Shown here: positions 6,610-54,805 of the stretch, one piece after another
Position numbering within the stretch: position 1 is the first letter of the stretch
Layout of the letters: the number at the start of each line of letters is the position of its first letter
Assembly: GCA_977030845.1 (NCBI GenBank)
Contig: OZ365113.1
Span: 22,320,001-22,384,000 of the forward strand
DNA: 64,000 bases
Direction of reading: 5' to 3'
From: Fimbriosthenelais zetlandica
Taxonomy: Eukaryota
Notes under the pieces: generated by a model
Seen by the model: the letters and a program-made list of their open reading frames with translations, nothing else
What the model was told of the DNA's origin: nothing
Database searches by the model: none
Program-made: the position numbers and the translations under genes

Positions 6610-9220
6610 TTGAATTCATTAGTGCCCCAGTGACATTTGTCGATTAGAAGTTATGAGAAATGAGAATGAGAGGTTGGGAGAGGTCGGGACGAAGGAGTTG
6701 GAAGTTGGAGGTGGGAGTTGTGGATGTATAGACAAAAAGGGAAGATCCATGATTTTGGTGGGTGGTTGGGTTGGGTGTGGGGGCGTAGTGGTTGGGGGTG
6801 TGTGTACGATCTGTTTTCAGATGGACAGTCCCTTATTTGGTGATCTATGATTCACATAAAAACCCTTTGAACTGAGACCTTTATTAGCTTCAAATACTGA
6901 CGTTACATTAAAATACAAATCAATAACTAGAATTGATCGATATTAAAAGAAAGGTCTGTCTTGTTAGGAGGAAGGGGCTGCAGGATAAACATGCATGTCC
7001 TCAGAGAGGAGGGTGGGAACGAGAGGAGGGAGAGGTTCTAGATGAATTGGACAGAGGACTGACCATAAATAGGTACTCTATCATTCCCCATAATCCCCTG
7101 TCAATGTAACAAATAGACAATACACGGGGAGATACATACCATAGCATGTACAAGGTTAGATTAGGCCTACTCAAGGGAATTCTTTGTAAACTCTTTCTTT
7201 AATATATAAGAATTGTGCATTATAAGTTACAGCCCAAATGAAAAGGCCCGTCAATCTATAGTCAGCTTAAAACTTAATAGCAATCGAATGGTATCAATTT
7301 AAAGCTGAGGAATGAATTCATATAACGCAACAGTTTCGTTTAATAACGGGTCAGTTGTCTCGATGTGCCGTGACCTTTGCACCCAGTCATGGTAGTCTTT
7401 TGATGACCAACCCGCGACACATTTAGGGAGCGAATTAGCAGACATAGTCGTTATTGATCTATGTCATCTAGCCCGAGCCCATGTTTTATAAATGATCTTT
7501 TACGACATTGGAGATTGATTAATGACCGCCTTTTGCGACATGCCGTATTTATGGTGGCGTTCAGGCCTCTCCCATCAATCCCTGCGCGACTTCCGTCCCG
7601 CGACATTACAAGATGCCTGCTAAACACTAAGCATTGGGTTCAGTCAGGCTAGAGTGTTTTATCAGATAAACATCATTCTAAGGCGGTTTTAATGGCCCTG
7701 AACAAAAAGGGTTTGGTGGAATTAAATTGAAGTAATAGAAGTTAATTCCTGTCGTGATTTAACGTCTGATATTCATCAAGGGGCATTAAGAGCTCGGTGA
7801 TGTTAAGTGCCGATTAAGAGCACCTCCATTACTGTGGATGAAGGTTTAAAAAGAAATCTCAAAGAATGTAATGTCACCAAGAGTCCCATTCCAAGCTCAG
7901 TTAAAGTACTTCATCAGACGAATTGTGTACAAGCCTTAAACATCTATTAAAGGTTGTTTCTGGGCTGATGAAACATATAGTGTCACACCCTTTTCTTCTT
8001 TATCAATAAAACGGAAAATTGACACGAAATGAATTCCTAAAAGTACTGATATTTTGCTCAGACTTAAAGTTATTCTTTCTTAGCTTACTTTCAATTGCAC
8101 CTAATTTAAGGCGAGCAATAGTAGACGAGTCTGATACCCTTTAGGTTCCCTATACTTCTCCGCACCAATAGTTATGCCTTGTAAATAAATCAGTTTTGAG
8201 GATATATATAACATAAGCAGCAATTATTTACCCAACTTTTCATGAATTGCCTACCATAGGATCACATTACACACTAGTGTACACGCTTCTGTTCTTACAT
8301 GAAACGAGACAAATGGCTGATTAAAAAAACGGATTAAAAAAATTCCATGACTCTGCTCATCCTATATCTATATCTATAGGCCTATCTATATCCCCTCCCA
8401 ACTCCCAACCCCCGACCCCCCCCCCCCCCCCCTCCGAGCGCGGGAAAACCTAACGGTTACGACGTGTACCGTCGCCTCACGTCGCTCTGATCAGCCCATA
8501 GTTCATAACGAGGCTGGGAGTGGGATATTGAGGTGAGGGGTGGCCGCTAGGCAAAAAACAAAGTAAATAACATTAAATAAATCCACATTTTCACTCCTAC
8601 ATATATCCATACCTCAGCCCTTACAAATAACAACATTCTCAACTCAGGATAAGACAGGATTAACTTCTAAATGTGAGATATTCCGCTCCCGCCACACCCG
8701 ACCACCCCTCCCGTCCGCTTCCCATTCCCACCCAGCCTGTCCCCTGGGCTGGCGGCATGCTCTCCCCACCACGAGACTGGATGCTCCAACAGGCTTGTGA
8801 AGGACACTTCATAACAGAACAAAAGGTGAGTTTTTTCATTTTGAAATGTCATAAAAGTGATGATAAACTGTTGATGAATAGTCAGGGAGTGTGTAGGGGG
8901 CTGGGGGAGGTCAGGGGGCTGTGATTAGGACAGGAATCCGATGTGTTTGACATGACCTTAGAATGTAAACAAAATGGCGGCAGATAAGGTTGCCAGGTTG
9001 GGGGAGGAAGGATCATGAAGGCGTGGAGCGGGGAGGAGGAGGTAATTATAGACATTATCCTGGCTAAACCAACAATATTAGGTGACGGGAGAGTGGACTA
9101 TACATGTATGATGAGGAATTCACGTTTAGTTTATTAGTTTTATTACCGGTACCAAGTGAGTCGTCTAATGAACAGCCAAAGTGTGACTGGAGCTAGCATG
9201 GGGGCAGCACAGTAGCCCTA

Positions 9221-9597
9221 TAGGCCTACATAGTGTCACTATATAGGCCTAGGTAGACATAGGCCTATATAGCGTCACATATAGTCCTAGGTAGACATAG
9301 GCCTAAATAGTGTCACATATAGACCTAGGTAGACATAGGCCTATATAGTGTCACATATAGTCTTAGGTAGACACAGGCCTATATAATATAGTGTCACATA
9401 TAATCTTAGGTAGACATTGGCCTATATTGTGTCACATATAGGCCTAGGTAGACATAAGCCTATATAGTGTCACATATAGTCTTAGGTAGACACAGGCCTA
9501 TATAATATAGTGTCACATATAATCTTAGGTAGACATTGGCCTATATTGTGTCACATATAGGCCTAGGTAGACATAAGCCTATATAGTGTCACATATA
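9221..9597. repeat. 38-bp hairpin minisatellite (~10 units) with a 119-bp higher-order duplication
   Basis: Unit ATATAGGCCTAGGTAGACATAGGCCTATATAGTGTCAC. Blocks 9355-9473 and 9474-9592 are identical 43+38+38 trimers. Confidence 0.95.
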
Positions 9598-9806
9598 GGA
9601 CGTCAAGGACCCTGCATTCTCCTTAGTTGTTGCTCAGAATTAAAATAATGGAAATAAATTAATAATAGTATTATATTTTGTGCACTATTATGACTGCAGT
9701 GGTGAGTCTCTCACTCGCCACCGGGTGGAGCCTCAGTGCCCCTGGTGGCGACATCTCATACTGCAGGTTACAGGCCAAGGCTGGTTGGGTTGTAATTTTT
9801 ATAGTT

Positions 9807-9869
9807 GATAATTAACAATTATCATTAGATAATTAACAATTATCATTAGATAATTAACAATTATCATTA
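9807..9869. repeat. 21-bp tandem repeat x3
   Basis: GATAATTAACAATTATCATTA, three exact copies; each contains the GATAATT/AATTATC inverted repeat. Confidence 0.95.
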
Positions 9870-10048
9870 ACATAAATCTAAAACTTGTATTATATTGTAT
9901 TAATTAACAAGGTTATTTATGTAAATCTAATATTAAGAATCAACTTCGGCTACTCGCCACGTCAGAATGTTTAAATATATTTTTTTATTTAGAATATTTA
10001 TAAAGCCATACAGGAGTGTGCTAGGCTCATTTTAAATCTGTTTTTCAG

Positions 10049-10985
10049 TTCCTGTCCTCCTTTCTGTCCTCCTTGTCTCTACATTGATGGGAAACAGAAC
10101 ATAAAGCTACAAAATATGACAAGATAGGTGAGTGGCCCATGTATTTAATAATTTTATGTCTGATTCTATTCATTTGTTGATTATATTACCATATTCTGTT
10201 TATGGAATTAATATAACATTGTCAGGAGAATTTTGTAATAACAACTTCTTGCTTTTTTTGTTTGTAGGTGTGGCCACTGACAGGCCTGACATTGACAGGC
10301 TGACCTAGCAGTGCTACCTGTCATTCACCACACGAGTCTCTGCCGTCTGTTCATCAAGGTCTCACACATTGATCATGAATCATGACTGGTCATGAATGTA
10401 CAGCGCCAGGCCGTCACAGCTACAGCAGGATTGTGTCTACGCGTCTAGATCATGGTAAGCTTCACAGCACTCACTTTATTATTTTTAATTGGATATAGGA
10501 AGAAATTCCTTAAGTACACATCAGCTGTTTTATTGACGGACAATAATCTGATGACAGAAGCAGGGCTATCCCGCCATGCTTCGACCGATACTTCAGGAGA
10601 ATTTATCTATTTTTTTAAAAATTGTTTATCAGATTTTAAGTTGTCTAAAATAAAACTTCTACCTATTATAATTTTATGAAATATATTATAACTTTTTAAA
10701 ATAATATTCTAAAATACTAGAATGTAAGACTTAGTGACAGTTGTCTCTTGAAATTTGGGTAATTTTACCTATTTTCACAACATTTCTGTATCTACCTCGA
10801 ACTTATTCGTCCGGAATATGATTTTTTTTGATTTTGTTCTTTATATTTTTTATGTTAATTTCCTCACTCTTAAAGATTTGTTTTTATTTTATTTTTCAGG
10901 TAACGTTGTGTGTTTCGTAAGTAGTTAATTATGTTGAGGGCCTGCCACATTGTTTGATTAAATTATTGTATATTGTCATGTATCC
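10049..10985 (+). ncRNA. Candidate spliced non-coding (or smORF) transcript: exons 10049-10127, 10268-10454, 10900-~10985
   Basis: Acceptors TTTTTCAG|10049, TTTTTTGTTTGTAG|10268 and TTTTATTTTTCAG|10900. Donors AG|GTGAGT at 10128 and ATG|GTAAGC at 10455. AT-rich introns of 140 and 445 bp. ATTAAA at 10957. The first two exons have stops in all frames. Confidence 0.55.
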
Positions 10986-11410
10986 CACAAACCCTGTCCA
11001 ACTACCAACCAAACCCCCAAACAAACCCCCAAACAAACTCCCAATCCCCCTACCCCCTACCCCCTATACCAACCCCTCCCCCAAACTAAACTTGAAACCT
11101 AAACTTTCCAACCTATCACATTAAATACGCTACATATGTAGACCGGGTCACTGGGAGGCGTGAAGCTGTCGTTTATTTTGTTGATTCGTTTTGTTCATAT
11201 TAGTTTTAAATGTTGAGTTGTTAAGACCTTTCAGTACATCGCCGGAATAGTCTCGGGTTCCCACTTTTTACAATTATTCCGAATAGTCATGACTCCGAAT
11301 AGTCATGTAAAACTTATATCATGAAAAATGAATATTTTTCATGGCGCCTGACTGGGTGATCCCAGTACAGGCTGAGTGGGCATGCTGAGGCACCCCACTA
11401 TAGGGAAATG

Positions 11411-11933
11411 ACATGTAATGTACCATACCAAGGTACCAGATAACATGTAATGTACCATACCAAGGTACCAGATAACATGTAATGTACCATACCAAGGTAC
11501 CAGATAACATGTAATGTACCATACCAAGGTACCTGATAACATGTAATGTACCATACCAAGGTACCTGATAACATGTAATGTACCATACCAAGGTACCTGA
11601 TAACATGTAATGTACCATACCAAGGTACCTGATAACATGTAATGTACCATACCAAGGTACCTGATAACATGTAATGTACCATACCAAGGTACCTGATAAC
11701 ATGTAATTTACCATACCAAGGTACCAGATAACATGTAATATACCATACCAAGGTACCAGATAACATGTAATGTACCATACCAAGGTACCTGATAACATGT
11801 AATGTACCATACCAAGGTACCTGATAACATGTAATATACCATACCAAGGTACCAGATAACATGTAATGTACCATACCAAGGTACCTGATAACATGTAATG
11901 TACCATACCAAGGTACCTGATAACATGTAATGT
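11411..11933. repeat. 32-bp minisatellite, main block (~16.3 units); continues at 16746-16804 and 18656-18690
   Basis: Unit ACATGTAATGTACCATACCAAGGTACC(A/T)GATA. The period is confirmed by the 32-aa (3x32 nt) periodicity of the spurious ORFs. Confidence 0.97.
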
Positions 11934-12335
11934 CCCTAGTAACACAGACAGCTGGGTCCCAGCTGGGCCCTATATGGGCCGCTTTCTGGGGCCCAGTTGG
12001 GCTATCCTGGGGGTCCCAGCTGGGACCCAACTGTGTTTGTCCGGCGGGCCAACCTGGGCCCCAGCTGGGTCACCCACATGGGCCCAACCTGGGTCCCAAC
12101 TGGGGCCCAGCTTCTGGGGCCCAGTTGGGCTGCCCTGCTGGGTCCCACTTTCTGGGGCCCAGTAGGGCTGCCCTGCTGGGTCCCACTTTCTGGGGCCCTG
12201 TTGGGTAGCCCTACTGGGCCCCACTGTCTGGGACCCAGCTGGGCTGCACTGCTGGGCCCCACCTGTGTTTGTCCAGCGGTCCCACCTGGGTCATCAACAT
12301 GGGCCCAACCTGGGTCCCAGCTGGGCCCCAGTTTG
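11934..12335. repeat. Left subterminal region dense in CCCAG/CTGGG and GGGCCC palindromes
   Basis: Repeated CCCAGCTGGG, GGGCCCAG and CTGGGTCCCA; internal duplication GGGCTGCCCTGCTGGGTCCCACTTTCTGGGGCCC x2. Confidence 0.9.
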
Positions 12336-12384
12336 TAAAGTTCTGGGCTTTTAGAGGTATAAAGGGGGCTGCTACTGAGATATT

Positions 12385-12905
12385 CCCGGGTTTTTACTGG
12401 TAAACATGTGCGTTTTTACTGGGATATGTCTGGGTTTTTACTGGTACATTTACTGGGTGATATCTGGGTTTTTACTGGTATACATGTGGGCTTTTTCTGG
12501 TATACAAGTGGGCTTTTACTGGTATATATCTGGGTTTTTACTGGTATACATGTGGGCTTTTACTGGTATATATCTGGGTTTTTACTGGTATACATGTGGG
12601 CTTTTACTGGTATACATGTGGGCTTTTTCTGGTATATATCTGGGCTTTTATTGGTATATATCTGGGCTTTTACTGGTATATATCTGGGTTTTTACTGGTA
12701 TACATGTGGGCTTTTACTGGTATATATCTGGGCTTTTACTGGTATATATCTGGGCTTTTACTGGTATATATCTGGGCTTTTACTGGTATACATGTGGGCT
12801 TTTACTGGTATATATCTGGGCTTTTACTGGTATATATCTGGGCTTTTACTGGTATACATGTGGGCTTTTACTGGGCTATATCTGGGCTTTGACTGGGGTA
12901 CATCA
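12385..12905. repeat. 22-bp minisatellite (~23 units, two interspersed variants)
   Basis: TTTTACTGGTATATATCTGGGC and TTTTACTGGTATACATGTGGGC alternate irregularly. Confidence 0.95.
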
Positions 12906-15039
12906 TTTTACTGGTATACATATGCTACTAGAACATTCATTGGTTTATACTATATATAGTATACATGTGGGATGTAATGAAGTATTAAAACAGAAATTGC
13001 ATGTTTGAAATAATTTTATTTCGCATATTAATATATAAAAAAGAGAACTTAATAATTCTGAGCAAGGATGCTGATGACAAATGCATAATGCTGCTGCATA
13101 AAGAAATGCATAAGTTACAAATTCAAACATCAATGTAAACATTAACTGTAATTGTGTGACATATTTTACCCACATTTATTATATTTGTTAGAAACTAGCA
13201 CTCTTTAGTGGATGTAATATTTCAGGAGTTCAAACGGTTGAAATTCCTATCGGCCTATAAAATTAGACCTTTCATCTGCATAACCAACATTTGGACCTCA
13301 TTAAGTTCTGGGCGGGGGTATTAGCAGAAGTTCCTGATGTAACGCTGCATCTCATTAAGCTTTGGACAGTCTGGTCAGGGTATTGGGGTCACATGGATAC
13401 TTGTCAACCGACAAATACACAAGCTTTTAATTACAAATTGTACAATACTGATGTCAATCCCAATAGCTTAGAAGACATAATTGTCACAAATTTTAAGGTC
13501 ACTTAAAATTCAAGCGCACATTCATTGGACCAATATCCAAGCACTTTTCGAGGCTTGTGCGAACGCGTCGCTTAAATAGTCATATCATTTAGGGAACAGG
13601 CATCCTTTTCTACTTGCATGTTTAATATTTTCTTATGACACTTTTTTAACTTAGTTACTGTTGCTGTATATTTAGGCGCGCCTCTGTTGTCTTGCTGTCT
13701 TGCAGATACTGCCTCGCTGGTCCACGTGTTGTAGCCATATCAGTCCATGCGTTTTCCTTGGTAGACCCTATAAAATTAGAAAGTATATTCTTATTACAAA
13801 GACTGGGGTAGGACTATAGCAATAATAGCATTCTACCTCTAAATTGTCCCTGCAGTAAGCTAAACTATACACCCCCTGTCACACCTTTCCGCTCACCCAT
13901 ACCCACATGTAATACTAATTAACCTCACGTGGCTGCCATACTATTATCTTCTATGAAACAGGATGTTAAACGCATCTTTAACTTGACCTGGAAACACTCC
14001 ACAGTATTAATTTTTAATTTAAACCTTTGGGGATGTAAACACATTTCACAATCTTGTTGGCAAGATCAAATTGTGTTTGTAGAAACCGTATAAGTCGATT
14101 CGTCATATATATGGATTTAATATTATTTACCAAAAAAAGCCACAGAATATCAGTGGCATTTTGTTTCCCTATATATGATGTGATGGTATTTTGGCCAAGC
14201 ATAGACAATTAGAATATACCAAATGTATATATTTGCATGCCTCCACGTGTTTCAGCACACACCCCAAGTCTTTAATCTAACTTCTAAGGAGCCACTTCAG
14301 TATAAATCAGACCGCATGTTATCTGATGTATCATGTACATAGAAAAATGAAATCTATGGAAAACGTTTGACCAAATGTTAACTCACCTTGGAATTGTTGT
14401 GGTCACTTCAAATCACAATTGAAGTAGACAAGAACTTTCAACACTGAAGAAGAGCTGTGGTCAGCACCAGAGCCAAAGTTCAAAAGGCCGCTGGACGGGT
14501 AGATGGGGTCTATAAGTAACCTCGGAACCGGATATCAGAGGGTCATGTTCCGTAACCGATGGTTACGGCCTAGGTGTACATAGACTAGCCCTCGCCCCTT
14601 AATTTTCTTTTTCTACCAAACAATTATTTTGATAAATTTCTGATGACTGATGAAGGTAACACTATACATGTATTATGTTCAAATTTATGTGAACATACGG
14701 TGAGTGTATTAATTTAATTATCATAATATATATTTCCCCTCCTGCTCACATAAAAGAATAATAAACGATTTGTGCAAGTCTAAAACGTAATCGGGCCTGT
14801 ACGGAGTAAGGGCCGGTTATACTGGTGTGACCATGCCAGCTCATGCAGCACATATACTGCATGGATGGCCTCCCGTTTGTATCTATAGTTTATTCAGTGT
14901 CTTTAAATTTAGAGGGAAGCAGGTGGAATTCTTTTGATACATACACTTCAACATTTAAAATGAAAGACACTCACTAGATTATGCCATGTTGGATAAAATG
15001 TTGTTGGATTAAATGTTGGATGAAATGTTACTGCCAGGC

Positions 15040-16497
15040 CGTGCCCTGTGGGATCCAAGTTGTAGCCCAGCAAAATGCCCAGTGTCGACCAATAATCACT
15101 TAGTGGGCTCTGCCCTGTTCGATCAAAGTTATAGCCCTTGTAGCCAGGCAAAAGGCCCAGTCTCGGCCCATAATCTCTTACTGGGCTAAGCCCAGTGTCG
15201 GCCCATGACCACATACTGGGCTATGCATGTTGTATCTAAGTTAAAGCCCAGCTACAAGCCCAGTCTCGGCCCATAATCTCGCACTGGGCTAAGCACAGTC
15301 TCGGCCCATAATCCCATTCTGGGCTATGCATGTTGTATCTAAGTTATAGCCCAGCTACAGGCCCAGTCGCGGCCCATAATCTCGTACTGGGCTAAGCCCA
15401 GTGTCGGCCCATAATCACATGCTGGGCTATGCATGTTGTATCTAAGTTATAGCCCAGCTACAGACCCAGTCTCGGCCCATAATCTCTTACTGGGCTAAGC
15501 CCAGTCTCGGCCCATAATCACATACTGGGCTATGCATGTTGTATCTAAGTTATAGCCCAGCTACAGGCCCAGTTTCGGCACATAATCTAGTACTGGGCTA
15601 AGCACAGTCTCGGCCCATAATCCCATTCTGGCTATGCATGTTGTATCTAAGTTATAGCCCAGCTACAAGCCCAGTCTCGGCCCATAATCCCATTCTGGGC
15701 TATGCATGTTGGATCTAAGTTATAGCCCAGCTACAGGCCCAGTCGCGGCCCATAATCTCTTACTGGGCTAAGCCCAGTGTCGGCCCATAATCACATGCTG
15801 GGCTATGCATGTTGTATCTAAGTTATAGCCCAGCTACAAGCCCAGTCTCGGCCCATAATCACATGCTGGGCTATGCATGTTGTATCTAAGTTATAGCCCA
15901 GCTACAGGCCCAGTCGCGGCCCATAATCTCGTACTGGGCTAAGCCCAGTGTCGGCCCATAATCACATGCTGGGCTATGCATGTTGTATCTAAGTTATAGC
16001 CCAGCTACAGGCCCAGTCTCGGCCCATAATCTCGTACTGGGCTAAGCCCAGTCTCGGCCCATAACCACATACTGGGCTATGCATGTTGTATCTAAGTTAA
16101 AGCCCAGCTACAAGCCCAGTCGCGGCCCATAATCTCGTACTGGTAAGCCCAGTCTCGGCCCATAATCACATGCTGGGCTATGCATGTTGTATCTAAGTTA
16201 TAGCCCAGCTACAGGCCCAGTCTCGGCCCATAATCTCTTACTGGGCTAAGCCCAGTCTCGGCCCATAATCACATGCTGGGCTATGCATGTTGTATCTAAG
16301 TTATAGCCCAGCTACAGGCCCAGTCGCAGCCCATAATCTCGTACTGGGCTAAGCCCAGTCTCGGCCCATAATCCCATTCTGGGCTATGCATGTTGGATCT
16401 AAGTTATAGCCCAGCGACAAGCCCAGTCCTGGCCCATAAACACTTACTGGGCTAAGCCCTGTTGGAAACAAGTCTTAGCCCAGCAAATAGCCCAGTA
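15040..16497. repeat. Composite 103-bp (35+35+33) tandem array, ~13 units, with two 68-bp variants
   Basis: The GCATGTTG(T/G)ATCTAAG anchor occurs at 15225, 15328, 15431, 15534, 15636, 15704, 15807, 15875, 15978, 16081, 16182, 16285 and 16388. Confidence 0.95.
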
Positions 16498-16804
16498 ACA
16501 ATCCATAATCAAACTATATCACCAAATGTTATTATTTATATTTTCAGTTTTTATGGGAAAATTGCAATGTAGTCTGACACATGTGATCTTTTCTTTGGTC
16601 ATTTTTTCAATCATGTAATGTGGTTTTGGCCCAACTGGGGCCCAGTTGGATTCCCATACACAAACCCAGTCTGAGCCCAAGCCCAGTTAAGCCCAGGTCG
16701 GCCAGCTTTATCCCAGTTGGGGCCCAGGTGGGCGTGTTTGCTGGGGTACCATACCAAGGTACCAGATAAGATGTAATGTACCATACCAAGGTACCAGATA
16801 ACAT

Positions 16805-18655
16805 CGAGGGTGTTATGCAATACTGTCGTATGTCAATAATTTTCATTTTTGACTTTATTTCACCAAACACATTATTTAAATATATATTTTGATAATTTAA
16901 GTTAAAATGATTCAAATCCTATTGGAACCCCTAAATGTGGAGGGGTCGTATAACACTTTTTCTCTAAAACCGAGTTTTTTGTTATGCAATACTGTCGTAT
17001 CTCCAGTTTCCTATTTTTGAGGCCTGCATCGAGAATGACGTTTTCTAATGAATTATGCATAAAAGTATAACCCAAACTTCAGCCCTTTCATGGCCCATGT
17101 CGGGTAAAAGCTGTGGGTAATCAAGTCATCTCCACAAATATGCATTGGAATGGGTTTCTCGTGTGATTTTTTGCCATTTTTACTGGTGCTGCCATCTTCT
17201 GGATGGCAACAACGTCTTGAGCAGACGACAGTAAGGTAGACGGGTGCACTTATGGAAAAAAAACCACCTTACCCCCAAAAAATTGATACAAAAGGTTTTT
17301 CAACAGTTTTTGGTAGTATCAGGTGTGCTGAGTAACATACTAAAAGTCTACCAAAATCTGACCACTGGTAACCATGGTAACGGCCATATTTCAAAATGGC
17401 TGCCATTCCGCACACAAAATGTCATCTTACTCTATAAATAATGGGTTTAGAGTTAATTTAATCACACCTACCCCACTTAAAGTTGACCCAAGGAATTTAA
17501 TGGTATGCACTATTTCTTAATTAAATGATTCTGTTGCCTGGCAACCAACGAGAGATTATTTATTTGCCTAGCAACCGGCATAAATAATGGTCCCATGTAG
17601 AATCTAATCGAACCTACCCCCCTAAAAGCAACCCAAGGAATTTAATGACATGCACTATTTCTTAATTTAATGATTCTATTGCCTAGCAACCAACGAGAGC
17701 TTATTTTTTTGCATAGCAACCGGCATAAATAGTGTTGTATCATGACATATGACAGTTTTGCACACTTAGAGCCAGGTTTGAAAAAAAATATTGGTCATGT
17801 AAAACTGTCGTATCATGACATACGACAGTTTTGCACACTTAGTGCCAGGTTTGAACAAAAATATGTGGAAAAATGGTTGCCATGGCAACCATATTTCAGC
17901 GTGTGCACCCTTTTAAAACTGGACATATATGTCTTTGCCATGACAATATTCAATATTATAGTGAATGGTCGACATACCTTATTCTAAGACTTCAAAATTA
18001 AATGTCATTGATCTACTATATTAACTACCCTTACTGATGCCTTGATAAGGCTTGTAGAAATGGTAAAAATCCAAAAGTATCATCTTCCGTTTCCATGGCC
18101 GTAAGGATGGTAATAATGGGTCGACATGGACAAATATGGTATCTACAGAAAGCTCTTGACATAGAAAACATGATTCGATGGGTAAATTTAATTTTTGAAT
18201 AGATTATCATGACCATCAAAAAGTGCTAATATACCCCAAAATCACACTTAAAACGGTTGCCATGGCAACAGTTTTCGTATTTTAGGATGTGCACCCTTCT
18301 AAAATGAAAAGTAACACTCCCAGCTATGCTCATACAAAATTTGGTGATTTTGTACCAACTAACTCCACTATTATCATGACATACGACAGTTTTGCACACT
18401 CACAGCCAGGGTCCAAGAACATTTTGGTTATGCAAAACTGTCGTATGTTCGTTTCCATGGAGAAGGAAGTGGAAAATAAATAATGTCGGATGCGGGTCAG
18501 AAAGTGCAAACAATTTTATGTTCTTTCTCAGAAAATGTTTTCTTTATCGACATTATTACGGATACAGGAGGTCTTTAACTTTTACATTAATCTTTAATGT
18601 GTTCCACTCTAAAATGCCTAAAATGAAGATACAACAGTATTGCATAACACCCTCG
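16805..18655. mobile_element. 1851-bp non-autonomous TIR element, 27-bp TIRs, 4-bp TSD ACAT
   Basis: Left end CGAGGGTGTTATGCAATACTGTCGTAT; right end (rc) CGAGGGTGTTATGCAATACTGTTGTAT (26/27). ACAT at 16801-04 and 18656-59; excision restores the 32-bp satellite unit. No transposase ORF. Superfamily unresolved (a 4-bp TSD is Sola-like; an alternative parse gives a CA TSD). Confidence 0.9.
17466..17735. repeat. ~146-bp internal tandem duplication inside the TIR element
   Basis: ACCTACCCC...ACCCAAGGAATTTAATG...TGCACTATTTCTTAATT...GCAACCAACGAGAG...GCAACCGGCATAAATA starts at 17466 and 17612. Confidence 0.85.
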
Positions 18656-18689
18656 ACATGTAATGTACCATACCAAGGTTCCAAGATAC

Positions 18690-18955
18690 CTGACCAGAAT
18701 GGTCATTGAACTGAAAAGACCAGAATGGTCATGGAAATGAAATGACTAGAATGGTTATGGGTCTGATATGACTAGAATGGTCATGGGTCTGATATGACTA
18801 GAATGGTCATGGGTCTGAAAAGAACAATATGGTCATAGAATGGTTTACCGTCATGGAATAAACCAGAATAGTTATACACCTGAAAAGACCAGAATGGTCA
18901 TGGAAATATAACTAGAATGGTTTACCGTGATGGAATAAACCAGAATAGTTTAATA
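18690..18955. repeat. Degenerate 26-bp minisatellite
   Basis: GACTAGAATGGTCATGGGTCTGATAT at 18744, 18770 and 18796, with diverged flanking units. Confidence 0.85.
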
Positions 18956-20399
18956 AAACTGCGGCCATTTAGAAGAGAAGACGACCCAGACATGGGAACG
19001 TCTGATACGGTGATAGACACCTGCACCAAGACGTCGTGGGAACCCGGACTCCAGCAGCTCATGACGTCATTGGTCGCGCATTTTTCCTACAAACAGGTCA
19101 GACGGGGGGAGTTTATACATGTTTGACTGTTGTTTGGCAGGCCCTCCTTAACACCTCATGTATAGTGTAGGATAGAGCACCAGTAGCTTAGATCAATCTC
19201 TATCTCTCTACAGTCATCTCATCTTCAAGCCTTGTCTCTAACATGTACAGGCGCGCAAAGTAGCGTGATTGAATGCGAAAATGCGCGCCTTACAAGACGA
19301 GGCTTGATATTGTCATGTTGGGGGGTGTATGTGGAGGGGGTGGTGGGGGCGGGGTGATAACATTGGTGGGTCTCACACTTCTATCATTATTATTGTTATA
19401 AATAGTCATGCTAGGCCCTGCTGCTGGTGACCAATGCAAGAACTTTTATAATGTTCACCTTATGTTTACCTTCCTTTTATAATCACTTTAATTTATTAAC
19501 AGATCTTATGATAAATCTTTACGATTCTCACTTAGAACAAGGCCAATGAATGTTATTCAACAATTCTTCAGAATATTTATATTTTTTAATACCTATATAG
19601 ATTCCCTATAGAAGACGCGTCTGATACCCTGTATAGATTCACTGTAGAATCCTATGGGGTGGCGGCTGGGCGGGGGCGGATTTAAATGTTAAGAATTAAC
19701 CTTTATAACCCTGGCCCCATAGACCGGGAGTTTCTGCCCCAACACCCAAATGTGCTGGGGCAGAATTAGTGAAAAGGCATCGGTCTGATTTGGGGTCTGG
19801 ATCCGGGACGGGGCAGATCCATGTAGGTGGAGGTCTAGGTGGCAAGGATCCACTATTTTTTTAGAGAGATTTTAGTTGGTGGGAGGTGGGGGAGATGTTG
19901 AGGGGTGGGGGGCACAAGGCTGGACTACACTATTATCGTCTACCCCTGTAGAACATGATACCTTTAGTGTTATTATTATTAGAACAAAGGGGGGCACCGC
20001 AGCATGGACAGGAAGCCTATAGTAATGTACAGGCTGATTTAGCTTTTCGGCTTTGCCTTTCTTACGACTAATGAGTTGCACCTCATTAGTGATCAGCAGC
20101 CCTTGGAGGCTGAGCTATGGTGCTGAGCCCTGGCGGGGTAATATTCAACCCCCAATTAATGCAAAATAATGTGAGAAGCTGAGGAGGGGGGCACTACTCA
20201 GATACATACTACTCATGCTCCTGCTCTTTACATTTCCACGAGAAAGGGTATACGCATGTCCAAGGCTAAAAATCTTAACCAACGGGGAAAAGGGTACAAA
20301 TCACTGATCAAACCAAATGACACTAATGCGACCCCTCTGTGAACATATGATATCACTAATCAATCTCCAAAGAAACGAAAGGGTATATTTGCGGTTATT

Positions 20400-21005: not shown

Positions 21006-22570
21006 GGGGAAATAAATGCGGGCTTGAAAAAGGATGATCGGTTTGCAATGTGTGGCAGGATAGGTCTCCTTTCATTGAAAGGCGGCGGGAGCCTGGGAAG
21101 TAAATTGGAATTGATGAAAGATTATAGGGATTTAAAATGCAATGAAGTAAGCTAAATAAATCTTAGATTGAAGGCCGTAATTCCTTCTTTTCAATCTCTT
21201 GGGGAACTCTTGGGAATTCATCAAGATTTCAAATTAATTTTCATGAGAATTTTTTGACCACCATTATTAATCTCGCAAAAATCATGGTAGGCCTATAATC
21301 GTTAGAGAGCATCCGGAGCCTGTTTCAAAACGGATTATTAGCCATAGACTTAGTATTGTATATTGTTGAAGATTTCCAATACAAATGGGAAGGAACTGGA
21401 AAGTGATCCCACCGGCCCAAGATACCCCAGAGAAATCAAATTTGATTACACAATTGTCTGGATTTGGTGGGCGTCATACTCATACTATCATACACCAAAA
21501 TTTGGGATATTTCAGGCAGAAATGACCAAAATGTTCTGGATTCAGCATATCGCGAGAGGCAAATGTAGGCTACTCAGGCCGTTAGAGAGAGGTAAAGTGT
21601 GTTCTTAGAGAGGCAAACTTACCATTGTGATAAAATCCGTTCCTTAGACTACCATGTAATCCATAACTTTTTGTGAAACGTATATTATAGGAGCTAGGTC
21701 TGTTTGGGGGAGGGTCGAGTTTCACTCCCTCCTTTACTCCCGCCGACTTCTTTCAGGTCCAGTGCTCATTGAACCACGGGCTGTGCTGGCTTTTTGAAAC
21801 TAAAGGCTATTCAGAACCCCCTCCCAACCGCTAAACACACCCCCCACCCCCACCCCATACGTCACTTCCACCATTGTTGACCCTTACACCTTTCCAGCTA
21901 CACGACTGTTGACATTGCTTCCCAAAGGTCTGATAATCGTGCCTTGAAACCCAATTAAGTCGTGGATATTTAATATATTTTGTGAATACAAATCATTCTG
22001 ATCGGAGTCGTATGGATTTACATGGGATTTATACTTTCCAGGAATAAGACATTTAGAAATAAGGTATGTGTGTGTGTAGCCATAACATTTTAACACTTGT
22101 TCCGTGGGTGGTATCGAGGGCGAGCCGTATGTTCCACTTTGAAGCGGTCAAATCGATCAGAACAAATAGAAACAGCTTTAGCCTGCAAAATTAGGGCACA
22201 ATTAGCCACGGTACACTATCCAGTGAAAGGATTCCGATGTTTGGTGGATTTACTATTGGAATTACACGGGATCCGTATTAGGGGGATTGGCTAGAGCACC
22301 TTGAGCACTTGAAAAGACATTGTATTGTATGCTGGAATGGGAAGGAAAGGGCAGTTTGTTATTGTTATTAAATAGGTTCATTTGAATGGAGAAATTACCT
22401 ACTTGTGGATTGTTTAGCTTGAACTCTGGGCTAATTCTAGAGACACATTTCTTTTAGCAAAAGGTGCTAAAGACACCAAATTTCTTTTAGCAATTTGAAG
22501 TCAGGTTTAGCAGATGTCAATTTGAAGGAAACATTATTGTTTTTTTTACCTGGAGCGTATATTAACAGCT

Positions 22571-22690
22571 AACTATTTTTATGTCAACTAATTTTTATGT
22601 CTACTGACTTTGAAGTCAACTAATTTTTATGTCTACTGATTTTGAAGTCAACTGATTTTGAAGTCAACTAATTTGGAAGTCAACTAATTG
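22571..22690. repeat. 16-bp minisatellite (~7 units)
   Basis: GTCAACTAATTTTTAT / GTCTACTGATTTTGAA units at 16-bp spacing from 22583. Confidence 0.9.
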
Positions 22691-36728: not shown

Positions 36729-37294
36729 GATTTTTGAATGGAACCTATTGGTGTTATTCAGTTTATATGATATATGATTTTTGAATGGAACCTATTGGTG
36801 TTATTCAGTTTATATGATATATGATTTTTGAATGGAACCTATTGGTGTTATTCAGTCTATGTGATATATGATTTTTAAATGGAACCTATTGGTCTTATTC
36901 AGTCTATGTGATATATGATTTTTGAATGGAACCTATTGGTGTTATTCAGTCTATGTGATATATGATTTTTAAATGGAACCTATTGGTCTTATTCAGTCTA
37001 TGTGATATATGATTTTTGAATGGAACCTATTGGTGTTATTCAGTCTATGTGATATATGATTTTTGAATGGAACCTATTGGTGTTATTCAGTCTATGTGAT
37101 ATATGATTTTTAAATGGAACCTATTGGTCTTATTCAGTCTATGTGATATATGATTTTTGAATGGAACCTATTGGTGTTATTCAGTCTATGTGATATATGA
37201 TTTTTAAATGGAACCTATTGGTGTTATTCAGTCTATGTGATATATGATTTTTGAATAGAACCTATTGATGTTATTCAGTCTATGTGATATATGA
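36729..37294. repeat. 47-bp minisatellite, 12 units
   Basis: GATTTTTGAATGGAACCTATTGGTGTTATTCAGTCTATGTGATATAT at 36729, 36776 and onward. Confidence 0.97.
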
Positions 37295-40200
37295 TAGAGA
37301 TGGAGGCTATAATACATTAGACTAACAAGGTATCGTATGGCCTTGTAATGCTCTGTGAATATGGCAGGGGGGTATTGTATACACATGACAGCAGGTGAAC
37401 AAATCCTCTACAAATGGCTGAAATCCCTTCTTTACATGGCCTTCCTATCTCAGCACCATGTCGCTAAATCCCCGGGTATTGTGGCATCATCCCTCGTGGA
37501 TCAGAGCCTCGTAGCTTGAGTAGCTCTCTTCTCATTTACACCACACAAATCCAGGCTTCTGAGCTGCTCCTACCCCACAATGAGCCACTCAGCTACCCGC
37601 ACCCATCCACAGAATATACATCTTCTCCGAAAATATTTTTGTTAGTTTAAAACTATGTTTAATCAAATGGTTTAATCATATGGTTTAATCAAATTAGAAT
37701 GAAGAAACAATTCTCATCCTACTATAGGATAATATACGCAGCAAGATGTTTTAAACGGATCAACTTATAAAGTATTAATGTAAATATCACTACCCAAAAA
37801 ATAATCATGATTCTCAACATTTTGATGATCAATACTGTAGCTGCAAGAAAAAGGTATGGAGTAGGAATAAAAACAATGGCTCTACATTGTCGTTGCCCAC
37901 ACATGCAATCACGAATGACCTTTTTATCAATATTTCAGAAGGGTCCTGGGCCTGGGACAGTTGGGTCACCAGCCGTGAACAATAAAGCCGACTCTTCTCT
38001 GAATTGAAGACGGCAGAGAGTGACCTTTTAGTGGGCAATTGTTTTGTGTGGCGCAGTGTGCGTCAGATGGATTATGACATATCATAGTGAATGAGTGATG
38101 GAGATAAATGGGTATTGAGGAGGGGACTAAGGGCTGAAACACAGAGGCCGTCTCTCTCACCCTCTCCTCTCCTCTCCACTCTCATGTTCTTATTGTCCAT
38201 GCTAGGCCATACGGAGTGATGGAGTGTAGTCTATAGAGGCGGGTGGCACTCACAACCAACGTGGGTGTCGGTGCATGTTCCCATTCCCCCATATACTTGC
38301 GAGTGTACCAAAAGTATCAAAATCAGTCTGCCGGCGTCACTTTTATTGAAAAAAATCGCCATGAAGATAGTCTAGATATCTGATATTGCAATCAAGATCA
38401 CACATCCAACTATCTTGATTTTGTCTGGGAATGAATAGCATTTACTTGAAGAAAATCGTGAACCCTAATCTAAAATGAAGTATCATCAAGATTTAAATTT
38501 GGGTAACTGAATTGCTAAAGAAATTGTAATCATTCCTATAGCACATTCCTGTATGGCTGTATAAATATTCTAAATTAAAAAAAAATATGCATAACTGCCT
38601 GCAAAGCTCCATTGAATATGGGAAGAAGATTGGGATAAACCCACTGTAGGTCGAGTGCCCTACTCGTGGAGGCTTGAAATGCTTAACTCGTCAACCAGTC
38701 ATCTCCAAATACCAAGCTCTGTGGAAGGATTGTAAACTGAATGAAACTGATTGATTACTCCACTCTTAGTACTGCTTCCCTTGTTGAACACCATGTCCAA
38801 ATATAGACTTTTAAAATAATTCATACTCTGAAGTGTACAGTAAATAGTTAAAGGTGCCATGATGAATACGGTTTCACCCTGTCAATCATTAATATTTATT
38901 AGACTAAATGCTAGTTGGTCTAGCAATAATAATACCGGCACCTCCAGGGAGTTGTGCTCGCTGCTAGGCCGAAGGCAGAAGAACGTCCCATTCTGTCAAA
39001 GTTCTTACAGTTTTCTCTTTTTCTTGACACCCTTCTTTTACCACATTATGCCACTTTTGAAAAATGCGGCAGCTGTCCCTTCAGTGTCCCCTGAATGCCC
39101 CTCTTAGACTCAGTTTCAGTTTCCATACCTGACTCAATCGGAACATTCCAACATAGATACAGGTACATGTGTAGCTTTTACAATTTTCGGTTTCTCGGTT
39201 TACTGGAAACCAGGCTTTATATAAACTGAATTCATGAAGCATTGTTCTTATGAGACGTTTAGTGTAAGGTTTTCCTTGGAATAAATTTGAAAAATAGCCT
39301 TTTTAAACATTTTTAATATCGCTCCTGTCTCAAGCGATATTTTGGTGTGTCACTTATCAGGGCGGCTGAGACGGGGTGTTGTGATAAGGCATCGAAGGGT
39401 TGGGTAGAATTAATACCCCTTTCTCTCATGAAGAAAGAAAACCTCCAGCCTCACATCAAAGCTTCATTTCCCCGCCTTCCCCCATCAGCTTACAAAGCTT
39501 GCTATATTTGATTTACACGTCAGATATGGGAACAATTCATGCCAGTTTTTATCAATTAAAACACCCCATTATTATGATCTAAGTGAAACAAGAGAACCCT
39601 CACTCCCCTTGCTGGATACATCACCGCAGTATTCGACATGTTAATGTTATCACCATTCGGCATGAAGCGCTGGCCCTTTACACGAGCGTCAGAAAAATAA
39701 AGCTATTTTTATGACATTAAATAATGTTGGGGTATGGATGGTGTTATCTGTGTACAGACAGTGGTGGGGGATGGAGGGAGGCTGACAGACTAAGTCAGGC
39801 TACCACCCATCAAGATGCTGGTAAAGCCGGGAGAAATAACACACCCTGCCTGCAGAGCTCTCTATACCCCACTTAATGACTGCTACAGGGATTCAGCCAG
39901 GTTACAAACACAGCTCTCCCGGCAATTCTTAATCCATAAGTGGGTTTAGGGCGGACCAGTATGTTCGGTTGTTCAGGGAATTGCCGTTCTAGTGCAGAGG
40001 TCCTTGAATTTAATCCTTACTATTGAGGACGTTGCCTATAATCCTGCCACCCTTTGTTTTTCGAAAACAACGTGGAGAATCTGGAGAGCATGATGCATCT
40101 TAAATACTCTGTACACTCTCGCCAGATAGTTGCATAAGCTGTTTACTTGACACGATACTAATGGGGATCCTTAAGTGCTAGGATTTGAACTGATGACCTT

Positions 40201-54642: not shown

Positions 54643-54805
54643 NNNNNNNNNNNNNNNNNNNNNNNNNNNNNNNNNNNNNNNNNNNNNNNNNNNNNNNNNN
54701 NNNNNNNNNNNNNNNNNNNNNNNNNNNNNNNNNNNNNNNNNNNNNNNNNNNNNNNNNNNNNNNNNNNNNNNNNNNNNNNNNNNNNNNNNNNNNNNNNNNN
54801 NNNNN
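54643..54805. other. Assembly gap (163 N) flanked by GA-rich sequence
   Basis: N run; both flanks are GAGA-rich, suggesting an unresolved microsatellite. Confidence 0.99.

What the first reader, a model, noticed from the sequence alone, without database searches (positions are those of the whole stretch)
11411..18690. One 32-bp minisatellite hit twice by unrelated DNA transposons within two repeat units
Seen: the ACATGTAATGTACCATACCAAGGTACC(A/T)GATA array is split into 16.3 + 1.8 + 1 units. Insertion 1 (11934-16745) duplicates GT; insertion 2 (16805-18655) duplicates ACAT. Removing both restores a continuous ~19-unit array. The insertions are only 59 bp of satellite apart, near the array's right end, and have different termini and TSD lengths. 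Inference: this array end, or its ACATGT/GGTACC palindromes, is an insertion hotspot or safe harbour, and 0.6 kb of satellite has grown into a 7.3-kb composite.
Basis: partly seen in the sequence, partly recalled or inferred. Interest (0 to 1): 0.7.

Follow-up and report, generated by a model that had tools for sequence, protein, structure and literature searches.

The report
Two transposons nested in a repeat
Two unrelated cut-and-paste jumping genes really did land 59 bases apart in one short tandem repeat, but that repeat is an internal part of a third, older mobile element, and its 13 sister arrays are untouched, so this is ordinary nesting of mobile DNA and not an insertion hotspot.

Summary
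A 32-bp array is split at 11933/11934 by a 4812-bp element flanked by GT. It is split again at 16804/16805 by a 1851-bp element flanked by ACAT. Removing both restores 19 in-register units.

Both inserts belong to multi-copy families with fixed duplication lengths:
- Insert 1 has about 30 copies and a 2-bp duplication at 19 of 19 sites. Its CCC...GGG ends look CACTA/CMC-like. No transposase was found.
- Insert 2 has about 27 copies and a 4-bp duplication at 15 of 20 sites. It is a 99.8-99.9% identical deletion derivative of elements encoding an intact RNase-H-fold DDE/D transposase (Pfam DUF7869, probably Sola-like).

New here: the "minisatellite" is not free-standing. Both its flanks recur with it at about 20 loci, so it is an internal array of a third, older dispersed repeat (window about 8286-19429, cut short on the right).

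- No other copy of either family lies in this satellite or its host repeat.
- All 13 sister arrays are uninterrupted.
- Neither family prefers tandem repeats.
- Only insert 2 shows a mild (about 2.5-fold) liking for ACATGT-type sites.

No sequencing runs were listed, so empty-site alleles could not be checked. The same scan has also flagged insert 1 separately (s1-203982).

The parts
8286..11410 (+). Left arm of the older host repeat. It is non-coding and carries a 38-bp palindromic array at about 9191-9623.
   Evidence: This arm recurs next to the 32-bp array at about 20 loci at 72-98% identity. Homology among copies starts near 8240-8286. There is no ORF of 100 aa or more.
11411..11933 (+). 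32-bp array, part 1 (16.3 units). It is an internal array of the host repeat.
11932..11933 (.). Left copy of the GT target-site duplication of insert 1. The right copy is at 16746-16747.
   Evidence: The family shows a 2-bp TSD at 19 of 19 sites.
11934..16745 (+). Insert 1: a 4812-bp non-autonomous transposon with ends CCCTAGTAACAC...GTGTTTGCTGGG. It has subterminal CCCAG/CTGGG repeats and internal 22-bp and 103-bp arrays.
   Evidence: The genome holds 34 copies of the 5' end and 31 of the 3' end with conserved termini. Sister copies are 91-99% identical. No transposase ORF was found.
16746..16804 (+). 32-bp array, part 2 (1.8 units), lying between the two inserts.
16801..16804 (.). Left copy of the ACAT target-site duplication of insert 2. 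The right copy is at 18656-18659.
   Evidence: The family shows a perfect 4-bp TSD at 15 of 20 sites.
16805..18655 (+). Insert 2: an 1851-bp non-autonomous deletion derivative with perfect 22-bp TIRs at 16805-16826 and 18634-18655.
   Evidence: The TIR occurs 27 times forward and 27 times reverse in the genome. The copy is 99.8-99.95% identical to L002, L006, L009 and L011. Its ends are shared with the autonomous copies L003 and L018, which encode a 622-codon DUF7869 transposase frame.
18656..18690 (+). 32-bp array, part 3 (the last, degenerate unit).
18691..19429 (+). Right arm of the host repeat, with a 26-bp array at 18691-18840. The window copy is truncated at 19429.
   Evidence: This arm recurs beside the array in about 20 copies. 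Other copies continue at least 1.1 kb further, and that continuation is absent from the whole window.

Best explanation
This is a three-layer nest of mobile DNA built by independent, successive events.

1. An old, non-coding dispersed repeat (at least 5.6 kb, about 20 copies) carries an internal 32-bp tandem array. The array has 0 to about 19 units, depending on the copy.
2. In this copy, a CACTA/CMC-like non-autonomous element (insert 1) inserted by cut-and-paste with a 2-bp staggered cut. Its family copies now differ by about 5%.
3. Much later, a very young deletion derivative of a DDE/D-transposase element (insert 2) inserted 59 bp away with a 4-bp staggered cut. It is 99.8-99.95% identical to four sister copies.

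The two inserts lie close together because insertions into non-coding, already repetitive DNA are harmless and persist in a genome full of young DNA transposons. A mild preference of insert 2 for A-N-A-T|G sites such as ACATGT may have helped. No dedicated hotspot is involved.

Shown: the structure, the TSDs, family membership, relative ages, the host repeat, and the lack of recurrence elsewhere. Inferred: the order of events, the role of neutrality, and the superfamily labels.
For: - Removing both inserts restores the array exactly in register.
- The TSD rules hold across each family.
- Both families are multi-copy with conserved ends.
- Insert 2 is 99.8-99.95% identical to four sister copies, against 91-99% (typically about 95%) for insert 1.
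- Two autonomous insert 2 relatives carry 622-codon frames identical at 619 of 622 positions.
- The transposase has a DUF7869 domain and invariant D336, D413 and E454/D456. Its AlphaFold model (pLDDT 81) matches TnsB, IstA, retroviral integrases, Mu, Hermes and P transposase.
- Both flanks of the array recur with it at about 20 loci.
- Sister arrays are uninterrupted (and the coordinates).
- No other family copy lies in the satellite or its host (searches compared with 10, 29-32).
- Neither family is enriched in tandem repeats.
- Other notes from this scan report many young DNA transposons in this genome, one of them inside a satellite (unchecked).
Against: For a satellite named in advance that totals only about 3.3 kb of a 447-Mb genome, one hit from each of two families of about 30 copies would be very unlikely. 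The rough expectation is about 4e-5 per family for this 608-bp array. The chance argument therefore rests on post-hoc selection among very many arrays, families and windows, and I could not quantify that genome-wide. Insert 2 does show a real, if mild, liking for the ACATGT site (97th percentile; a second copy, L009, used the same ACAT|GT). No reads were available to confirm the junctions or to look for empty alleles.
Confidence: 0.78

Rival explanations
1. Sequence-determined hotspot: the 32-bp unit, through its ACATGT/GGTACC palindromes or the array end, actively attracts cut-and-paste transposases.
For: There are two hits within 59 bp. Insert 2 used ACAT|GT, as did copy L009. The unit has 4 of 32 positions above the 95th percentile of the insert 2 target profile, against 1.6 expected.
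Against: The 13 sister arrays with the same units (about 85 units) have no insertions. No other copy of either family lies in the satellite. The insert 1 site is ordinary (72nd percentile) and lies in neither palindrome. A-N-A-T sites occur about once per 40 nt per strand in DNA of this composition (arithmetic from the base composition).
Confidence: 0.07
2. Locus-specific preference rather than sequence preference: this particular long array, or the DNA around insert 1 once it was present, offered accessible or fragile chromatin that favoured the second insertion.
For: This is one of the longest arrays of its family: 19 units, against 2-15 in the fetched sister copies. The host copies cluster at 20.7-26.4 Mb of contig C19, which may be a repeat-rich region.
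Against: There is no direct evidence. C1:5587422-5588025 holds an array of similar length with no insertion. Two events cannot establish a rate.
Confidence: 0.1
3. Assembly artefact: near-identical transposon copies were wrongly joined into a satellite.
For: Insert 2 is 99.9% identical to other copies. Satellites are prone to misassembly. No reads could be laid.
Against: Both inserts carry exact family-typical TSDs, and the array phase continues exactly across each insert. A chimeric join would not reproduce this twice. The assembly is chromosome-scale, with 79 contigs.
Confidence: 0.03

Closest known systems
Nested transposable-element insertions (TE-in-TE) in non-coding repeats
   Same: Younger elements with intact TSDs sit inside an older repeat, and removing them restores the host sequence. 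Age increases from the inserts to the host.
   Different: Nothing essential differs. The only particular is that both inserts fall within the host's short internal minisatellite, 59 bp apart.
CACTA / CMC superfamily, animal-fungal type with CCC termini and a 2-bp TSD (as summarised in PMC3227409, citing DeMarco 2006 and Feschotte 2008)
   Same: Insert 1 ends in CCCTA... and ...CTGGG, which both fit CMCWR/CCC. Its family makes a 2-bp TSD at 19 of 19 sites. It has dense subterminal repeats.
   Different: No transposase was found in any copy. A whole-genome search with Pfam Transposase_21 gave only one weak, unrelated hit. About half of the element is tandem arrays.
Sola superfamily (4-bp TSD, DDD transposase). 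This comparison rests on my recollection of Bao et al. 2009, Mol Biol Evol 26:983, which is not held in the library.
   Same: The insert 2 family makes 4-bp TSDs. Its transposase has an RNase-H fold with invariant D, D and E/D, and it is widespread in Metazoa, especially Lepidoptera and molluscs.
   Different: Membership could not be tested because no Sola profile is in the available libraries. Pfam only names the domain DUF7869.
piggyBac
   Same: Insert 1 starts with CCCTAG and ends with GGG, like piggyBac-type 5'-CC..GG-3' termini (PMC10045372).
   Different: piggyBac makes 4-bp TTAA duplications. The insert 1 family makes variable 2-bp duplications (TA at only 7 of 19 sites).

Membership tests
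Nested TE insertion | Each insert is flanked by a target-site duplication of the length typical of its family. | tested here: met
   The window has GT and ACAT. The families show 2 bp at 19 of 19 sites and 4 bp at 15 of 20 sites.
Nested TE insertion | Removing the inserts restores a continuous host sequence, and paralogous empty sites exist. | tested here: met
   Removal gives 19 in-register units. Sister arrays are uninterrupted in L042-L052.
Nested TE insertion | The host is itself a dispersed repeat. | tested here: met
   Both flanks co-occur with the array at about 20 loci on 5 contigs.
Insertion hotspot | Recurrent independent insertions occur at equivalent sequences elsewhere. | tested here: not met
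   There are no insertions in the 13 sister arrays, and no other copy of either family lies in the satellite or host repeat.
Insertion hotspot | The target motif is strongly enriched in the array relative to background. | tested here: inconclusive
   For insert 2 the enrichment is about 2.5-fold (4 of 32 positions against 1.6 expected). For insert 1 there is none. The training sets are small (14 and 18 sites).
CACTA/CMC (insert 1) | Termini are CCC / CMCWR. | tested here: met
   The ends read CCCTA... and, as reverse complement, CCCAG.... The criterion is taken from PMC3227409.
CACTA/CMC (insert 1) | The TSD is 2-3 bp. | tested here: met
   The TSD is 2 bp at 19 of 19 sites.
CACTA/CMC (insert 1) | An autonomous partner encodes a CMC-type transposase. 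| tested here: inconclusive
   The longer copies carry only nested reverse-transcriptase elements or repeat-derived ORFs. A genome search with PF02992 gave one sub-threshold, unrelated hit. That model is plant-biased.
ISL2EU (insert 1) | The TSD is 5'-AT-3' in an A|AT|T target, and the TIRs start with GG (PMC4482050). | tested here: not met
   AT occurs at 2 of 19 sites, and the termini start with CCC.
Tc1/mariner (insert 1) | The TSD is always TA. | tested here: not met
   TA occurs at 7 of 19 sites. Eight other dinucleotides are also used.
piggyBac (insert 1) | The TSD is TTAA. | tested here: not met
   The TSDs are variable and 2 bp long, with no TTAA flanks.
Sola (insert 2) | The TSD is 4 bp. 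| tested here: met
   15 of 20 sites are perfect and 2 more have one mismatch.
Sola (insert 2) | The transposase is a DDD/E type with an RNase-H fold. | tested here: met
   D336, D413 and E454/D456 are invariant. Foldseek hits are DDE transposases and integrases, though E-values are weak (3e-4 and above).
Sola (insert 2) | The sequence matches reference Sola1, Sola2 or Sola3 transposase profiles. | not testable with these tools
   Pfam has no Sola model (PMC5751038 says so). Only DUF7869 matches.
Ginger1 (insert 2) | The element has an rve-type integrase domain and TGT...ACA termini. | tested here: not met
   There is no rve hit even at E of 10 or below. The termini are CGAGGG...CCCTCG.

The most novel reading that the evidence does not exclude
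The longest arrays of this host repeat act as locus-specific landing pads, for example through length-dependent unusual DNA structure at ACATGT/GGTACC palindromes. Unrelated cut-and-paste transposases would then be drawn to this array, and the clean sister arrays would simply be too short or too young to have been hit.
Probability: 0.06. Interest if true: 0.5.

Novelty: new member of a known kind. Interest (0 to 1): 0.2.

Why it matters
It matters little beyond annotation. The locus is a clean worked example of nested insertion. It also gives exact boundaries, TSD rules and target preferences for two transposon families, one of which (insert 2) looks currently active: it has intact transposase frames and near-identical copies. 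The useful correction is that a "minisatellite" can be the internal array of a mobile element. This explains why it is dispersed over several chromosomes, and it removes the need for a hotspot. If the hotspot had been real, it would have been a natural landing site for two different transposases, but the sister arrays argue against that.

Tried and rejected
- Read support and empty-site alleles: the look-up of sequencing runs listed no run, so read laying could not be used.
The analysis therefore rests on 40 fetched copies plus loci returned by searches.
- Autonomous partner of insert 1:
  - The long copies L022 and L032 contain nested reverse-transcriptase elements.
  - The L033 ORFs have no family match, and the one piece put to the Atlas (7996-9078) found nothing; they lie in repeat-rich DNA.
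  - The PF02992 genome search gave one weak, unrelated hit.
- ISL2EU, Tc1/mariner and piggyBac for insert 1 were rejected on the TSD, and ISL2EU also on its termini.
- Ginger1 for insert 2 was rejected because there is no rve domain and the termini are wrong.
- A PDB sequence-profile search with the transposase alignment found nothing. Only the fold search was informative.
- Bao 2009 and Yuan & Wessler 2011 are not held in the library, so the Sola label rests on memory.
- The sharp right boundary of the host at 19429 first looked like the family's end. The other copies showed that it is a truncation of the window copy.
- A composite unit moving as one piece (insert 1 + 59 bp + insert 2) was rejected, because the two families' ends lie next to each other nowhere else in the genome.
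Full report
**1. The observation**

Tandem Repeats Finder reports a 32-bp array at 11411-11933, with 16.3 copies and 97% matches. Direct reading shows four features:
- The array stops after ...AACATGTAATGT.
- It is followed by CCCTAGTAACAC...GTGTTTGCTGGG (11934-16745), then resumes as GTACCATACC... for 59 bp.
- It stops again after ...GATAACAT and is followed by CGAGGGTGTTATGCAATACTGT...ACAGTATTGCATAACACCCTCG (16805-18655).
- It resumes as ACATGTAATGTACC... for one last, degenerate unit.

Deleting each insert together with one copy of its flanking duplication gives 19 consecutive units in perfect register. Every coordinate and number in the finding is therefore correct.

**2. Both inserts are members of transposon families**

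*Insert 2.* Its 22-bp end occurs 27 times forward and 27 times reverse in the 447-Mb assembly, mostly as pairs 1.7-14 kb apart.

*Insert 1.* Its 5' and 3' 23-mers occur 34 and 31 times, mostly paired at 0.3-11.6 kb.

I fetched 20 copies of each family with 150-bp flanks.
- Every complete insert 1 copy has a perfect 2-bp duplication of variable sequence, 19 of 19 including the window copy. TA occurs 7 times; AT, AA, TT and GT occur twice each; TG, CC, AG and CG occur once each.
- Insert 2 copies have a perfect 4-bp duplication at 15 of 20 sites, and a one-mismatch duplication at two more.

The GT and ACAT duplications in the window are thus the families' normal footprints. The two families differ in end sequence and in the stagger of the cut, so "unrelated" is justified.

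**3. What the two elements are**

*Insert 2.*
- It is an internal-deletion derivative. Its first 435 bp and roughly its last 800 bp match the ends of the 6.8-kb and 7.1-kb copies L003 and L018.
- Each of those copies carries an uninterrupted 622-codon frame. The two frames are identical at 619 of 622 positions.
- The protein matches only Pfam DUF7869. It has hundreds of homologues at 35-41% identity across molluscs, Lepidoptera, sea urchins and other animals.
- An alignment of 24 homologues shows invariant D336, D413 and E454/D456.
- The AlphaFold model has a mean pLDDT of 81. Its matches are to TnsB, IstA, retroviral integrases, Mu, Hermes and P-element transposases, at weak E-values of 3e-4 and above. 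I read it as an RNase-H-fold DDE/D transposase.
- A 4-bp duplication with a DDD/E enzyme fits my recollection of the Sola superfamily, but no Sola profile was available, so the label is an inference. Ginger1 is excluded: there is no rve domain and the ends are wrong.
- The window copy is 99.8-99.95% identical to four other 1851-bp copies, so it belongs to a very recent burst.

*Insert 1.*
- It has no coding capacity.
- The longer family members owe their length to nested reverse-transcriptase elements or to repeat-derived open frames.
- Three hallmarks point to the CACTA/CMC type: CCC...GGG ends (CCCTA and CCCAG, which both fit CMCWR), a 2-bp duplication, and dense subterminal CCCAG/CTGGG repeats. 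PMC3227409 gives CCC or CMCWR termini and a 2-bp duplication as the hallmarks of CACTA/CMC-type elements.
- ISL2EU requires AT duplications and GG ends (PMC4482050) and is not met. Tc1/mariner (TA only) and piggyBac (TTAA) are also not met.
- A genome search with Pfam Transposase_21 found only one sub-threshold, unrelated locus. The mobilising enzyme remains unknown.
- Family copies are typically about 95% identical in the unique region, and the nearest reaches 98.9%. Insert 1 is therefore much older than insert 2.

**4. The "minisatellite" belongs to a third mobile element**

- The 32-mer occurs only about 103 times in the genome, at about 14 loci on contigs C1, C10, C19 and C25.
- The 320 bp to the left of the array and the 740 bp to its right recur directly beside these arrays, and also at loci where the array is reduced to none or a couple of units.
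- Homology extends leftwards to about window 8286.
- To the right, all copies match up to window 19429. The other copies then continue together for at least 1.1 kb more, and that stretch is missing from the whole window. The window copy is therefore truncated there.
- The host is a non-coding dispersed repeat of at least 5.6 kb, with about 20 copies at 72-98% identity, and it carries several internal arrays (38-bp, 32-bp, 26-bp).
- Nine copies lie on C19, eight of them between 20.7 and 26.4 Mb.
- In the fetched sister copies the 32-bp array has 2.2 to 14.9 units and is never interrupted. Coordinates show the same for the copies that were not fetched.

**5. Testing the hotspot idea**

The nearest are 240 kb and 490 kb away (searches compared with 10, 29-32).
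- *Recurrence.* The 13 sister arrays, about 85 units or 2.7 kb of the same sequence, carry no insertion of any kind.
- *Target preference of insert 2.* A symmetrised profile from 14 other insert 2 sites gives a consensus of about C|A-N-A-T|G. The site used in the window (a|ACAT|gt) scores at the 97th percentile of window background. Copy L009 used the same ACAT|GT. The unit contains 4 of 32 positions above the 95th percentile, against 1.6 expected.
- *Target preference of insert 1.* Its site scores at the 72nd percentile and lies in neither palindrome.
- *Tandem repeats in general.* Two of 18 other insert 1 sites and 1 of 15 other insert 2 sites lie in tandem repeats. TRF coverage of the window outside the host is 5.8%.

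The sequence of the array is therefore not a hotspot. ACATGT is merely one acceptable site for insert 2.

**6. Interpretation**

The simplest account is sequential, independent insertion into tolerated, non-coding repeat DNA. First came the host repeat with its array, then insert 1, and much later insert 2. For a satellite named in advance the double hit would be very improbable: about 4e-5 per family for this 608-bp array. However, the locus was picked out after the fact from a genome that, by other notes of this scan, is rich in young DNA transposons, one of them lying in a satellite (unchecked). I could not compute the genome-wide expectation, so some probability stays with a locus-level preference. 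Misassembly is unlikely, because two exact family-typical duplications and exact phase continuity would not arise from chimeric joins. No reads were available to prove this.

**7. Verdict**

The structural reading is right, and the hotspot reading is not supported. The arrangement is an ordinary nested-transposon structure, with the added point that the satellite is itself transposon-borne. Interest is low.

Noticed in passing
L003:1674-3539 (-) and L018:3743-5608 (+) (G000:C1:29764693-29771448 and C25:23461995-23469134): Two full-length copies of the insert 2 family carry uninterrupted 622-codon DUF7869 transposase frames that are identical at 619 of 622 positions. Together with the 99.9% identical 1851-bp derivatives, this suggests the family is still active.
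   Followed up: partly
L015:2393-4087 (+) (inside the 13.8-kb TIR pair G000:C19:4317995-4331808): A 565-aa ORF with a DNA/RNA non-specific endonuclease domain (PF01223, E = 5e-19) lies between two insert 2-type ends that are 13.8 kb apart. It could be captured cargo, or two separate elements could be flanking a host gene.
   Followed up: no
G000:C27:12015966-12016264: The 5' and 3' ends of insert 1 lie only 299 bp apart here. This looks like a MITE-sized deletion derivative of the 4.8-kb family.
   Followed up: no
window 8118-8143 and 19608-19633: A 26-bp direct repeat (88% identical; ATAGTAGACGAGTCTGATACCCTTTA and ATAGAAGACGCGTCTGATACCCTGTA) lies just outside both ends of the host-repeat copy. 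It is unexplained, but could be fragments of yet another repeat into which the host inserted.
   Followed up: no
G000:C19:20.7-26.4 Mb: Eight of about 20 copies of the host repeat cluster within 6 Mb of contig C19 around the window. This suggests local spread or a repeat-rich chromosomal region.
   Followed up: no
window 9191-9623: There is a 38-bp array (about 10 units) built of palindromic GTGTCACTATATAGGCCTAGGTAGACATAGGCCTATAT-type units inside the host repeat's left arm.
   Followed up: no
window 36729-37295 and 54643-54805: A separate 47-bp array of 12 units lies at 36729-37295. A 163-base run of N lies at 54643-54805 (a gap or masked stretch, left untouched).
   Followed up: no
window 22426-22600: A 175-bp segment recurs at least 18 times at 90-95% identity, mostly on contig C13. 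It is probably a short interspersed or MITE-like repeat.
   Followed up: no
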